A DNA stretch of 64,000 nucleotides from Hemiscyllium ocellatum (lineage: Eukaryota): contig NC_083438.1 of assembly GCF_020745735.1 (NCBI RefSeq), forward strand, positions 32,548,443 through 32,612,442. The letters run 5' to 3'. The notes under the pieces are model-generated. The model did not search any database. It was not told the DNA's origin and saw only the letters and a list, made by a program, of their open reading frames with translations. Every line of letters starts with the position of its first letter. Within the stretch, counting starts at the first letter, position 1. A program made the translations under genes and the position numbers. Positions 3,485 to 36,917 of this stretch are shown piece by piece.

Positions 3485-3778
3485 ATACACCGGCCCGGCC
3501 GGAGATTACAGCCGCTCCCTCGCACCCGGCCTATCTGGTGGGAGAAAATGTCACCCTGACGTGTGTAATCCCAAACCGTTACACACCCGCTCACATCCAG
3601 TTTCTGAAAGACTCTGCCCTCGTCACCAACAGCACTGGGAACCAACGGCGATTCACCCACAATGTCCTCCACCTCACCTCCGTCGATGTGGGGAACTACA
3701 CGTGTTCTTACCAGACCCTGGAGTATGGACAGTTGTTCTCATCAGCCCCCAGCCTCCCAGTGAAAATCGCCCTCACTC
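3485..3778 (+). CDS. Exon A: C2-type Ig domain (LILR/OSCAR/A1BG-like)
   Basis: ttcttcttgcag|ATACACC...ACTC|GTGAGT; 294 nt; [27 protein letters not shown]...DVGNYTCSY...[12 protein letters not shown]. Confidence 0.9.
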
Positions 3779-36700: not shown

Positions 36701-36917
36701 CTCTCCTATCCACAGTGACATTTCAGTTTTGAAAAGATGGTTCAGAGAAATAATGGATTTGATATCGGAGCTAGTTTGGGGATCAGTGTTTAACTTATCT
36801 CAAGCCAAACTCATTGTCTTTTGCATTCTGTCCTCTCAAGGTCATTTCAGATTGGAGGGACATGCTGAAGAGTTTGATATTATCAATCCAGTCTACAGCA
36901 CAGACATTGGGTCTTAA
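3485..36917 (+). CDS. Multi-exon type I membrane receptor, 5'-partial: Ig-SRCR-Ig-(Ig)x4-Ig-Ig-TM-cytoplasmic NPxY tail. Exons 3485-3778, 5110-5424, 6251-6550, 13082-13375, 17043-17336, 22902-23195, 27429-27722, 30210-30509, 32373-32669, 33958-34083, 36841-36917
   Basis: Each internal exon has an AG acceptor and a GT donor in phase 1 at both ends, and no in-frame stop. Domains are recognisable by their Cys/Trp patterns. A single transcript is inferred, not shown. Confidence 0.75.
3946..4240 (+). mobile_element. HE1-like SINE interrupted by a pLTR fragment
   Basis: tRNA-like head GGTGGCTCAGTGGTTAGCACTGCTGCC; the body resumes at 4117. Confidence 0.8.
3989..4116 (+). mobile_element. Penelope pLTR-only mini-insertion with ~14-bp TSD
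   Basis: cctcacagcaccag at 3975-3988 and 4117-4130; hammerhead-like core at 3993-4020. Confidence 0.75.
4738..4990 (+). mobile_element. HE1-like SINE, 5'-truncated
   Basis: GGAGTTTGCACATTCTCCCCGTGTCTGCGTGGGTTTCCTCCGGGTGCTCC core. Confidence 0.8.
5110..5424 (+). CDS. Exon B: group B (8-Cys) SRCR domain
   Basis: ttacag|AGCCCCGTG...CCCA|GTAAGG; 315 nt; [30 protein letters not shown]...VVCRQLGCG...WMDEVSC...LWSC...[12 protein letters not shown]; all eight Cys are in one exon. Confidence 0.95.
5488..6110 (+). repeat. CA/CT-rich low-complexity tract in the SRCR-Ig intron
   Basis: (CA)n, (CACT)n and (CT)n runs. Confidence 0.9.
6251..6550 (+). CDS. Exon C: C2-type Ig domain
   Basis: ctcccaccag|GCTTCC...GTAG|GTGAGT; 300 nt; [12 protein letters not shown]...IQC...GGSYSCLY...[10 protein letters not shown]. 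Confidence 0.9.
6600..7320 (+). mobile_element. CR1-type 3' ORF2 fragments (partly duplicated), with an unrelated ~220-bp MITE-like insert at ~6998-7215
   Basis: Two copies of gcaggtgcagca...ggaatattgtcc; the CR1 sequence is split between gagaaaggg and gtactggaggggg. Confidence 0.55.
8363..10491 (+). mobile_element. Penelope-like element (RT C-terminus + GIY-YIG) with an inverted 5' pLTR and 15-bp TSD
   Basis: ORF 8886-10106: [33 protein letters not shown]; TSD cctctcagaactctg at 8348-8362 and 10492-10506. Confidence 0.9.
10403..10430 (+). ncRNA. Minimal hammerhead-ribozyme-like motif in pLTR
   Basis: CTGAAGA A GGGC-TTAT-GCCC GAAAC GTC. Confidence 0.6.
11670..12060 (+). repeat. Three tandem ~125-bp CR1-derived units
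   Basis: Repeated gtagctaaagtg...gagtac...cttactcgaggagggatggagttgcatc...agctcagagaaaag. Confidence 0.75.
13082..13375 (+). CDS. Exon D1: C2-type Ig domain, tandem copy 1
   Basis: gtgtttcag|ATCCTCC...ACAG|GTGAGT; 294 nt; [12 protein letters not shown]...VTIEC...QGLYTCSY...[11 protein letters not shown]. Confidence 0.9.
13618..17000 (+). mobile_element. CR1 RT-to-3' fragment, duplication unit 1 (split by an L1 derivative)
   Basis: Begins aagttaaaggtggataaat; ends gctggtacaattac just before the D2 acceptor region. Confidence 0.85.
14550..16502 (+). mobile_element. L1-derived element with ORF1 remnant only (HAL1-like), 15-bp TSD
   Basis: 5' CAAGATGGCGG; ORF1p-like [25 protein letters not shown]...YSLRYP; AT-rich 3' region; A-rich end; TSD aaagtggagtcatgg at 14535-14549 and 16503-16517; no ORF2 motifs seen. 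Confidence 0.75.
17043..17336 (+). CDS. Exon D2: Ig domain, tandem copy 2
   Basis: ctgtttcag|ATCCTCC...ACAA|GTGAGT; 294 nt, open; near-identical to D1. Confidence 0.85.
17533..17835 (-). mobile_element. HE1-like SINE, near full-length
   Basis: Reverse complement of GGCACAGTGGCACAGTGGTTAGCACTGCTGCC... Confidence 0.9.
18340..21815 (+). mobile_element. Nested CR1-family LINE (EN + RT + 3' end), degenerate
   Basis: [29 protein letters not shown], 3' tail. Confidence 0.85.
20764..21167 (+). mobile_element. Penelope 3' end/pLTR with 10-bp TSD
   Basis: cccaagttga at 20754-20763 and 21168-21177. Confidence 0.7.
22902..23195 (+). CDS. Exon D3: Ig domain, tandem copy 3
   Basis: ctgtttcag|ATCCACC...ACAG|GTGAGT; 294 nt, open. 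Confidence 0.85.
23859..26258 (-). mobile_element. Composite Penelope-like insertion (RT/GIY-YIG fragments, pLTRs in both orientations)
   Basis: Minus ORFs [10 protein letters not shown] and LYIGEIG; TSD ttagcaag(g/a)ttaga at 23845-23858 and 26259-26272. Confidence 0.8.
26299..26480. mobile_element. Palindromic pLTR-only mini-element with 16-bp TSD
   Basis: Two head-to-head pLTR ends; tcctgggagacctagc at 26283-26298 and 26481-26496. Confidence 0.8.
27429..27722 (+). CDS. Exon D4: Ig domain, tandem copy 4
   Basis: ctgtttcag|ATCCACC...ACAG|GTGGGT; 294 nt, open; two extra Cys. Confidence 0.8.
28238..28411. other. Assembly gap (174 N)
   Basis: Run of N. Confidence 1.
28412..28575 (+). repeat. 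CT-rich microsatellite flanking the gap
   Basis: (CT)n-like sequence. Confidence 0.9.
28790..29690 (+). mobile_element. LINE 3' fragment (L2/CR1-like) with an internal ~85-bp tandem amplification; related copy at ~32950-33720
   Basis: Repeated cattcaatggcattaccatcactgaatcccccactatcaacatcctggggattacc. Confidence 0.55.
30210..30509 (+). CDS. Exon E: C2-type Ig domain
   Basis: gtgttccag|GGTTAACT...CAGG|GTAACA; 300 nt; ATVSC...MFYKDG...NGGSYTCQC...SNAVSITVQ; the donor is weaker than the others. Confidence 0.8.
30700..31510 (-). repeat. HE1-like SINE with an internal ~54-bp minisatellite (about 9-10 copies)
   Basis: Unit ggacaatttagcatggccaatccaccctaacctgcacatccctgggcactatg; SINE head at ~31380-31510. 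Confidence 0.85.
30851..31086. mobile_element. Palindromic pLTR-only element inside the minisatellite
   Basis: About 100-bp inverted arms centred on gaatgag-gg-ctcattc (~30943-30958). Confidence 0.8.
32373..32669 (+). CDS. Exon F: membrane-proximal Ig domain
   Basis: tttcactttcag|AGGCGG...AGCG|GTGAGT; 297 nt; KPVITG...LSITC...FFLQRDG...[10 protein letters not shown]...SESMQVTVS. Confidence 0.9.
33958..34083 (+). CDS. Transmembrane exon
   Basis: tttctccaatccag|AATACAGG...CAAG|GTAAAG; 126 nt; [21 protein letters not shown] followed by basic stop-transfer RARNKSK. Confidence 0.85.
34990..36670. mobile_element. CR1 fragments (minus ~34990-35960, plus ~35980-36670) in the TM-tail intron
   Basis: FADDTKL on minus; ESQVDRV...AFIG and the 3' tail on plus. 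Confidence 0.75.
36841..36917 (+). CDS. Probable terminal cytoplasmic exon ([25 protein letters not shown])
   Basis: ttttgcattctgtcctctcaag| acceptor; phase 1 matches the TM exon; NPVY motif; TAA at 36915-36917. Confidence 0.6.

What the first reader, a model, noticed from the sequence alone, without database searches (positions are those of the whole stretch)
3485..36917. Candidate hybrid immune receptor: eight LILR-like Ig domains with an embedded group-B SRCR domain
Seen: eleven exons splice in frame into Ig-SRCR-Ig-(Ig)x4-Ig-Ig-TM-tail, with no intervening leader, TM or stop. Known: mammalian group-B SRCR receptors (CD5, CD6, CD163, WC1/SCART, DMBT1) carry no Ig domains. Known: LRC-type receptors (LILR, OSCAR, GPVI, A1BG) have this Ig style (P.P.I...P, F.L.K.G, G.Y.C.Y, S.PS..V.I) but no SRCR. 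Inference: a chimeric pattern-recognition receptor formed by exon shuffling in cartilaginous fish. Caveat: SRCR+Ig proteins occur among auto-annotated fish models, so novelty must be tested.
Basis: partly seen in the sequence, partly recalled or inferred. Interest (0 to 1): 0.85.

Follow-up and report, generated by a model that had tools for sequence, protein, structure and literature searches.

The report
Shark SRCR-Ig mosaic receptor, 3' half
The eleven exons are real and form the last 960 residues of an annotated but unstudied epaulette-shark gene for a 2103-residue membrane protein that alternates scavenger-receptor (SRCR) and LILR/FcR-like Ig domains, a layout also found in many other sharks, rays and some bony fishes.

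Summary
Observation confirmed. Eleven phase-1 exons with AG/GT sites (3485-36917) splice into Ig-SRCR-Ig-Ig x4-Ig-Ig-TM-tail. The product matches residues 1144-2103 of XP_060708561.1 (LOC132833917, Hemiscyllium ocellatum) at 100% identity without gaps.

- The window holds the 3' half of a larger gene: signal peptide, 6 SRCR-B and 14 Ig domains, built from repeated Ig-SRCR-Ig units.
- The N gap (28238-28411) lies in the intron between D4 and Ig8. Two Chiloscyllium orthologue models keep the same domain order and an identical D4|Ig8 junction, so no coding exon seems hidden. DNA continuity itself was not tested.
- Ig+SRCR-B chimeras are known in mammals (FCRLS). Interleaved SRCR/Ig mosaics are annotated in at least ten elasmobranch genera, several teleosts and a caecilian, and one batoid paralogue exists as a 4.7-kb intronless transcript contig.
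- The Ig domains match LRC members (PIR-B/LILR, KIR, OSCAR, TARM1) about as well as FCRL5 and IGSF1.

The uncharged TM and short NPVY / acidic di-Ile tail, without ITIM or ITAM, suggest an endocytic scavenger-type receptor; this is inferred. The internal SRCRs carry Arg where DMBT1 has a cation-binding Asp. No direct junction reads were obtained for this gene. The scan had already followed up the upstream half (s1-228423).

The parts
3485..3778 (+). Ig exon (A-type, precedes the SRCR); = XP_060708561.1 residues ~1144-1241
   Evidence: AG/GT sites, phase 1-1; Ig_3 3.8e-10, Ig_2 4.4e-10; 100% match to P0257
5110..5424 (+). Group-B SRCR exon (sixth and last SRCR of the gene); 8 Cys; has VCDRSW where DMBT1 has VCDDSW
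   Evidence: Pfam SRCR 3.7e-36; PDB CD163/DMBT1 hits; model superposes on DMBT1 SRCR at 1.4-1.6 A with 57-59% identity; D->R at the D1020-equivalent position
6251..6550 (+). Ig exon (B-type, follows the SRCR; HIDE1-Ig-like)
   Evidence: Splice sites; PF17737 4.2e-7, above its cut-off; 90-96% identical among units and species
13082..13375 (+). Ig exon D1 of the four-fold tandem D array
   Evidence: 1:1 orthologue in C. punctatum, 90/98 identical
17043..17336 (+). Ig exon D2
   Evidence: 93/98 identical to C. punctatum D2
22902..23195 (+). Ig exon D3
   Evidence: 90/98 identical to C. punctatum D3
27429..27722 (+). Ig exon D4
   Evidence: 93/98 identical to C. punctatum D4
28238..28411 (.). Assembly gap (174 N) inside the intron between D4 and Ig8
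   Evidence: The D4|Ig8 protein junction is identical in two orthologue models with no extra domain. DNA continuity was not tested.
30210..30509 (+). Ig exon 8
   Evidence: 94-95/100 identical in orthologues
32373..32669 (+). Ig exon 9 (membrane-proximal)
33958..34083 (+). Stalk + transmembrane exon; hydrophobic span without a charged residue, followed by RARNKSKQ
   Evidence: hydrophobic segment 2046-2074 of P0257
36841..36917 (+). Last coding exon: cytoplasmic tail ending ...[16 protein letters not shown], stop TAA 36915-36917
   Evidence: identical motif in C. punctatum

Best explanation
The stretch is the 3' half (last 11 coding exons) of LOC132833917 of the epaulette shark. The gene encodes a 2103-residue type I membrane glycoprotein: signal peptide, two N-terminal SRCR-B domains, four near-identical Ig(A)-SRCR-Ig(B) units, four D-type Ig domains, two further Ig domains, one uncharged TM helix and a 33-residue tail. 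It grew by tandem duplication of phase-1 exons and of whole Ig-SRCR-Ig units. It belongs to an undescribed but widely annotated group of SRCR/Ig mosaic proteins of elasmobranchs. This identity and architecture is shown (about 0.95). Inferred function (about 0.45): a long, stalk-like scavenger or pattern-recognition receptor. It would capture ligand through its distal SRCRs, which keep the full DMBT1-type acidic cation site, and perhaps through its Ig domains. It would be internalised through the NPVY and acidic di-isoleucine motifs of its tail, rather than signalling through ITIM/ITAM or a charged-TM adaptor. The four internal SRCRs have Arg in place of the Asp shared by both exposed cation sites of DMBT1. 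They therefore probably do not bind ligand by the canonical Ca2+ bridge.
For: Exons, phases and splice sites. 100% gap-free identity to XP_060708561.1 residues 1144-2103 and the full domain map. Colinear orthologues at 92.7-92.9% identity in C. punctatum and C. plagiosum, with the same D4|Ig8 junction. 1:1 orthology of D1-D4. Purifying selection on the D exons. The SRCR exon is the best-conserved exon between species (100-102 of 105). An RNA-type run of the same organism holds 0.27 of the sampled words of 3485-6550; three spliced exons without introns would give 0.27. It also holds 0.37 of the SRCR-centred stretch. A batoid paralogue exists as a 4733-nt contig with an uninterrupted 1469-codon ORF over 4 SRCR and 10 Ig domains, which must be a spliced mRNA. 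Tail and TM features, conserved in C. punctatum. Cation-site residues: with PMC7043408 (D1019A and D1020A abolish all ligand binding).
Against: No read or transcript of this gene itself was seen crossing the Ig/SRCR junctions or the gap intron (one search failed; two searches found no own-species fragments). The NCBI models are predictions. The word shares are indirect and can come from the near-identical upstream units. The function rests on short linear motifs and on analogy. The tails of paralogues differ widely, and the C. plagiosum model ends in another tail. Tissue and cell type are unknown.
Confidence: 0.6

Rival explanations
1. Adhesion or co-receptor molecule, as with CD6 or WC1. The long SRCR/Ig ectodomain would bind a cell-surface partner and modulate lymphocyte or myeloid activation. 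The tail tyrosine would act as a phospho-docking site (NPxY for PTB-domain adaptors) rather than as an endocytic signal.
For: The SRCR-B receptors CD6 and WC1 work this way (established knowledge). NPxY motifs also bind PTB signalling adaptors. The internal SRCRs lack the canonical cation site, as expected if they serve protein-protein contacts or spacing. Some basking-shark relatives are auto-named 'antigen WC1.1-like'.
Against: The tail is only 33 residues with a single tyrosine, no ITIM/ITAM/ITSM and no charged TM residue. No partner or expression data exist.
Confidence: 0.2
2. Immunoglobulin-binding receptor. FcR/FCRL-like Ig domains together with CD5L-like SRCR domains would bind polymeric IgM or other shark Ig for uptake or transport.
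For: The Ig profile's best PDB hit is FCRL5 (9.7e-32). FcalphaRI and pIgR also appear, and amphibian relatives are named FcRL5-like. The mammalian Ig+SRCR chimera FCRLS belongs to the FCRL family (PMC7940838). CD5L SRCRs bind IgM (titles listed).
Against: LRC members that do not bind Ig match equally well. No Fc-binding signature was tested. This is analogy only.
Confidence: 0.1
3. Annotation or assembly artefact. Two neighbouring genes (an SRCR/Ig gene and an Ig-TM gene) would be fused by the gene model, or wrongly joined across the N gap, or unit copies would be inflated by mis-assembly.
For: A gap of estimated size lies between D4 and Ig8. Unit number differs among the three species' models, 4/3/2. 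No direct transcript evidence exists for this gene.
Against: There is no leader, TM or stop between the exons, and all are phase 1-1. Two other species' assemblies give the same order and an identical junction. The D exons are diverged (dS 0.14-0.26) and 1:1 orthologous. Paralogues with TM at the end of long S/I arrays are common, and one is a full transcript.
Confidence: 0.05

Closest known systems
[quoted passage not shown]
   Same: The only described vertebrate protein family that combines FcR/LRC-type C2 Ig domains with a type-B SRCR domain through exon-level recombination (PMC7940838, PMC4016189).
   Different: FCRLS is secreted, with no TM. It has one SRCR at the C-terminus after the Ig domains, and is held to be a eutherian FCRL x CD5L recombinant. 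The shark protein is membrane-anchored, has six SRCRs interleaved with 14 Ig domains, and is more than 2000 aa long.
CD163 / CD163L1 (M130, M160)
   Same: Type I membrane proteins with many SRCR-B domains, one TM and a short tail with internalisation motifs. They are endocytic scavenger receptors. The window's SRCR matches CD163 domains strongly.
   Different: CD163 has no Ig domains. Its ligand-binding SRCRs use intact acidic Ca2+ clusters, whereas the shark internal SRCRs carry Arg at one of these positions.
DMBT1 / SALSA / gp340
   Same: Closest SRCR sequences and structures: 57-59% identity, 1.4-1.6 A. The two N-terminal SRCRs of the shark protein keep the DMBT1 cation-site residues.
   Different: DMBT1 is secreted, with SRCR-SID repeats plus CUB and ZP domains and no Ig or TM.
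LILR / PIR-B, KIR, OSCAR, TARM1, NKp46 (leukocyte receptor complex) and FCRL5 / IGSF1
   Same: Same kind of C2 Ig domain, one phase-1 exon each. These are the best Ig matches by profile and by fold. Atlas features point to FCRL2, KIR3DX1, A1BG, IGSF1 and GPVI.
   Different: None of these has SRCR domains. They signal through ITIM tails or charged-TM adaptors, both absent here. Assignment to LRC rather than FCRL could not be made.
Annotated, unnamed SRCR/Ig mosaics of other elasmobranchs (for example Scyliorhinus XP_038642640, Pristis LOC127566443, Narcine XP_069783103, Heterodontus)
   Same: Same interleaved S/I architecture ending in Ig array-TM. 35-42% identity over 82-99% of the window's product. 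Their SRCRs form one clade with this gene's (SH-aLRT 96).
   Different: Different numbers and orders of domains and unrelated cytoplasmic tails. Their internal SRCRs keep VCDD.

Membership tests
SRCR superfamily, group B | About 100-110-residue domain matching the SRCR profile | tested here: met
   PF00530 E=3.7e-36, full-length match 1-100 of 100; fold match to DMBT1 SRCR at 1.4-1.6 A
SRCR superfamily, group B | Eight cysteines and the whole domain on a single exon (group A: six Cys, two exons) | tested here: met
   8 Cys in exon 5110-5424, bounded by AG/GT
SRCR superfamily, group B | Acidic cation-binding cluster (DMBT1 D1019, D1020, D1058, D1059, N1081, E1086) used for ligand binding | tested here: not met
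   The D1020-equivalent residue is Arg in this exon and in all four internal SRCRs, also in C. punctatum; the others are kept. The two N-terminal SRCRs, outside the window, keep DD (PMC7043408). This is a functional feature, not a condition of fold membership.
LRC-type Ig receptors (LILR/KIR/OSCAR/GPVI) | C2-type Ig domains, one phase-1 exon each, closest to LRC members | tested here: inconclusive
   The exon structure is met. PIR-B, LILR, KIR, OSCAR, LAIR1, TARM1 and NKp46 are among the best hits, but FCRL5, IGSF1, FCRL4, CEA and Robo score alike.
LRC-type Ig receptors (LILR/KIR/OSCAR/GPVI) | ITIM-bearing tail, or short tail with a charged TM residue for FcRgamma/DAP12 | tested here: not met
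   Uncharged TM; the tail has one Tyr in NPVY and no (I/V/L/S)xYxx(L/V/I) motif
LRC-type Ig receptors (LILR/KIR/OSCAR/GPVI) | Location in a leukocyte-receptor-complex syntenic block; split leader with a 36-bp mini-exon | not testable with these tools
The leader and the flanks lie outside the window.
FCRLS | FCRL Ig domains followed by a single C-terminal SRCR-B, no transmembrane segment, secreted | tested here: not met
   SRCRs are interleaved, six in total, and a TM plus tail is present
CD163/WC1-type multi-SRCR membrane receptors | Ectodomain made of SRCR-B domains only | tested here: not met
   14 Ig domains are interleaved
LOC132833917 (Hemiscyllium ocellatum) and its hemiscylliid orthologues | Sequence identity and colinearity with the annotated protein | tested here: met
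   100% over 960 aa without gaps to XP_060708561.1; 92.9% to C. punctatum XP_072409711.1 and 92.7% to C. plagiosum XP_043539181.1

The most novel reading that the evidence does not exclude
SRCR/Ig mosaics are an old, never-described vertebrate receptor family. LRC/FcR-type C2 Ig domains would have been interleaved with SRCR-B domains by phase-1 exon shuffling before or early in gnathostome radiation. The family would have expanded and kept changing unit number in elasmobranchs, and would serve as endocytic pattern-recognition receptors. This would also place LRC/FcR-type Ig domains in cartilaginous fish, against the published view that they arose with bony fish.
Probability: 0.3. Interest if true: 0.6.

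Novelty: new variant of a known kind. Interest (0 to 1): 0.45.

Why it matters
Sharks are the oldest living lineage with Ig-based adaptive immunity, yet their innate IgSF receptors are poorly known. One survey reported no LRC- or FcRL-type C2-only genes in sharks (PMC4016189). This gene and its relatives show that such Ig domains are abundant in elasmobranchs, often fused in series with scavenger-receptor domains. That combination was known only from the odd mammalian FCRLS. If the family proves to be a rapidly evolving endocytic pattern-recognition system, it offers an independent example of how exon shuffling builds immune receptors, and a handle on the origin of the LRC/FcR Ig lineage. As it stands, this is an annotated, uncharacterised gene whose upstream half the scan had already flagged.

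Tried and rejected
There is therefore no junction or gap evidence from reads.
- The search for homologous proteins with the SRCR exon, with the 960-aa product and with one Ig-SRCR-Ig unit was swamped by multi-SRCR DMBT1 models. It gave no own-species transcript fragment. Only one search added mosaic relatives (Heterodontus, Kryptolebias, Polymixia).
- The second word search gave 0.37, against 0.52 expected for a whole spliced exon. This is consistent with expression but not decisive.
- Single-domain phmmer against PDB could not place the Ig type.
- Alignment A2 wrongly included a whole protein and was not used.
- Literature searches for SRCR+Ig receptors in sharks or teleosts, and for the LOC/XP identifiers, found nothing beyond FCRLS. 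The bamboo-shark single-cell paper has no supplements held.
- The SRCR domain tree is the quick version with SH-aLRT only, because the careful search did not finish. It groups domains by taxon and does not settle when the Ig/SRCR fusion arose.
- The bacterial promoter/terminator scan is irrelevant here. AATAAA at 37653 is only a possible poly(A) signal.
- Rejected: a separate leader in 1-3484. That stretch is a CR1-like LINE.
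Full report
**The observation**

The window contains eleven open exons on the + strand between 3485 and 36917.
- I located each boundary from the sequence. All have a pyrimidine-rich tract plus AG before them and GT after them.
- All are phase 1-1, so any subset can be joined in frame.
- Pfam assigns exon 5110-5424 to SRCR (E=3.7e-36, full-length match). It assigns the eight roughly 98-residue exons to Ig_2/Ig_3/ig; the exon after the SRCR also matches the HIDE1-type Ig above its cut-off.
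- The SRCR exon has eight cysteines on a single exon, the definition of group B.
- The TM exon (33958-34083) encodes an uncharged hydrophobic span followed by RARNKSKQ. The last exon (36841-36917) adds a tail ending in [16 protein letters not shown] and a TAA stop.
- A search of the whole window for further phase-1 Ig exons found none in this gene.
- The stretch upstream of 3485 is a CR1-like LINE and holds no leader.

**The gap**

- The 174 N at 28238-28411 lie inside the intron between D4 (ends 27722) and Ig8 (starts 30210).
- The sequence alone cannot show continuity. Homology to the other D units stops at about 27805, and the flanks of the gap match nothing informative.
- The only read-laying run failed on a filter and was counted.
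- Indirect evidence comes from protein models of two other species with their own assemblies, Chiloscyllium punctatum and C. plagiosum. They are colinear with the window's product at 92.9% and 92.7% identity, have four D domains followed directly by Ig8, and show an identical junction ...IVLT|GLTLSV....
- The four D domains are 1:1 orthologous between H. ocellatum and C. punctatum: 90-93 of 98 residues identical on the diagonal against 77-86 off it.
- So no coding exon appears to be hidden in the gap, and the join is in frame. Physical continuity of the DNA remains untested.

**What it is**

- A phmmer search of 1.84 billion representatives with the first Ig exon gave a 1707-aa top hit.
- Its 90% cluster holds XP_060708561.1, 'uncharacterized protein LOC132833917 [Hemiscyllium ocellatum]', 2103 aa.
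- My spliced product of 960 aa equals its residues 1144-2103 at 100% identity without a gap. The window is therefore epaulette-shark DNA, and the finding is the 3' half of that gene.
- Local HMM mapping of the whole protein gives: signal peptide, S-S-I-S-I-I-S-I-I-S-I-I-S-I, then I x4 (the D array), I, I, TM and tail. That is six SRCR and fourteen Ig domains.
- The Ig(A)-SRCR-Ig(B) units are 90-95% identical to one another. Their number differs between the three species' models, 4, 3 and 2.
- The D exons are older copies: 81-87% nucleotide identity over exon plus flanks, dS 0.14-0.26 and dN/dS 0.28-0.53.
- An earlier follow-up in this scan (s1-228423) had reached the same identification from the adjacent upstream stretch. 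I tested it independently as described.

**Transcript evidence**

Nothing direct was obtained for this gene.
- An RNA-type run of the same organism holds 0.27 of the sampled 31-mers of 3485-6550. The three exons without introns and without boundary-spanning words would give 819/3036 = 0.27.
- The same run holds 0.37 of a stretch centred on the SRCR exon. A whole spliced exon would give 0.52, and DNA runs hold only 0.57-0.65.
- This fits expression of the SRCR exon. It is indirect, and the near-identical upstream units may contribute.
- For the family there is direct evidence. P0136 comes from a Logan contig (SRR6291316_7730) of 4733 nt with 5' and 3' untranslated ends and one uninterrupted ORF of 1469 codons covering S-I-I-S-I-I-I-S-I-I-I-S-I-I.
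- In a family where every domain is a separate exon, such a contig can only be a spliced mRNA. It is 61% identical to a sawfish protein, so it comes from a batoid.

**How widespread the layout is**

- Of the 150 closest relatives of the Ig exon, 20 carry SRCR domains, including four of the top five.
- Named members come from Chiloscyllium, Scyliorhinus, Heterodontus, Heptranchias, Mustelus, Cetorhinus (a 25-member cluster), Pristis and Narcine.
- They also come from the teleosts Salminus, Epinephelus, Kryptolebias and Polymixia, and from the caecilian Geotrypetes.
- Most end in a TM after an Ig array, but their tails are unrelated.
- ESM-Atlas searches return several clusters of 77-150 chordate proteins with both SRCR and Ig. 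One, named 'Fc receptor-like protein 2' with 100% SRCR, is most likely the mis-annotated mammalian FCRLS.
- A quick SRCR tree puts this gene's SRCRs in an elasmobranch clade (SH-aLRT 96) with those of the Scyliorhinus, Heterodontus, Mustelus, Pristis and Narcine mosaics and an Ig-less Mobula 'DMBT1-like' model.
- In that tree teleost mosaics group with teleost DMBT1. A second set of elasmobranch mosaics, including the transcript above, has much more divergent SRCRs.
- The tree is weakly resolved and does not date the fusion.

**Kind of Ig domain**

- A profile of the eight Ig exons hits FCRL5 (9.7e-32), PIR-B (2.2e-23), LILRA6/B1/B2/B3, KIR3DL1 and FcalphaRI, but also titin, CEA and Robo.
- The B-type Ig alone hits only PIR-B, OSCAR and LAIR1, and weakly.
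- An AlphaFold model of one unit (pLDDT 88) finds TARM1, LILRB3/PIR-B, IGSF1, FCRL4, NKp46, OSCAR and LILRB4 as its best Ig matches.
- Ig-only relatives are auto-named IGSF1-like or FcRL5-like.
- The domains therefore belong to the FcR/LRC/IGSF1 kind of C2 Ig. 'LILR-like' is acceptable as a description but not shown as membership.

**Likely function**

*Shown*
- It is a type I membrane protein with a very long S/I ectodomain, an uncharged TM and a 33-residue tail with no ITIM, ITAM or ITSM.
- The tail carries IINPVY (an NPxY motif with a hydrophobic residue at -5) preceded by EEFDII (an acidic di-isoleucine). Both are identical in C. punctatum.

*From established knowledge*
- NPxY and [DE]xxxL[LI]-type motifs recruit clathrin adaptors.
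- CD163, the best-known multi-SRCR-B membrane receptor, is endocytic.

*From the literature and the alignments*
- In DMBT1, SRCR ligand binding needs D1019 and D1020; each alanine mutant abolishes binding to all ligands tested (PMC7043408).
- The two N-terminal SRCRs of the shark protein keep these residues. All four internal ones, including the window's, have Arg at the D1020 position, and this is conserved in C. punctatum.

*Inferred (about 0.45)*
- The protein is an endocytic scavenger or pattern-recognition receptor whose distal SRCR pair binds ligand in the canonical way.
- The internal units would act as spacers or have another specificity.

*Rivals*
- A CD6/WC1-like adhesion or co-receptor.
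- An Ig-binding receptor.
- With low weight, a model or assembly artefact.

**Comparison and novelty**

FCRLS is such a chimera, though secreted and with one terminal SRCR (PMC7940838, PMC4016189).
- The shark gene differs in being membrane-bound, interleaved and repetitive.
- I found no paper on this family or on its identifiers. One survey stated that sharks lack FcRL- and LRC-type C2-only genes, which the present hits contradict.
- I rate it a new variant of a known kind: annotated, uncharacterised and of moderate interest. The scan had already followed up its upstream half.

Noticed in passing
window 49688-50026 (+): A separate phase-1 IgV exon of the B7/butyrophilin kind. Pfam V-set 2.7e-8; best PDB hits are VTCN1/B7-H4 and CD276/B7-H3 at 2e-13, then MOG, PD-L1 and BTN1A1. 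It lies about 13 kb downstream of the mosaic gene; its other exons were not sought.
   Followed up: partly
window 1-3300, 8886-10106, 13600-14100, 16580-17040, 22500-22900, 27000-27430, 58596-59963: The introns and flanks are packed with CR1/LINE-type reverse-transcriptase fragments. A LINE 3' tail sits directly upstream of Ig1 and of D2-D4, and homology between the D units extends about 430 bp upstream into it.
   Followed up: partly
window ~5480-5860: A long CA-rich microsatellite (it reads as THTHTH... in translation) starts about 55 nt after the SRCR exon's donor.
   Followed up: no
P0257, P0107, P0258 (orthologue models): The number of near-identical Ig-SRCR-Ig units differs: 4 in H. ocellatum, 3 in C. 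punctatum and 2 in C. plagiosum. The C. plagiosum model also has another order of D types and a different C-terminal tail. This may be real copy-number evolution or assembly collapse.
   Followed up: partly
P0125, P0114, P0132, P0160, P0136 / locus L001: A second elasmobranch SRCR/Ig mosaic subfamily has much more divergent SRCR domains. It includes a 25-member cluster in basking shark and a batoid transcript that ends without a TM, a probable secreted form.
   Followed up: partly
P0110, P0112, P0113 (Amblyraja, Mustelus, Leucoraja): Ig-only, multi-domain 'IGSF1-like' proteins of skates and sharks are among the closest relatives of the Ig exons. This is at odds with the 2014 statement that sharks lack LRC/FcRL-type C2-only genes.
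   Followed up: no
window 3485-6550 and 4900-5480 (runs X2-X8): RNA-type runs labelled as four other organisms hold 0.13-0.26 of the 31-mers of these stretches. This may be expression of near-identical exons in close relatives, or shared repeats.
   Followed up: no
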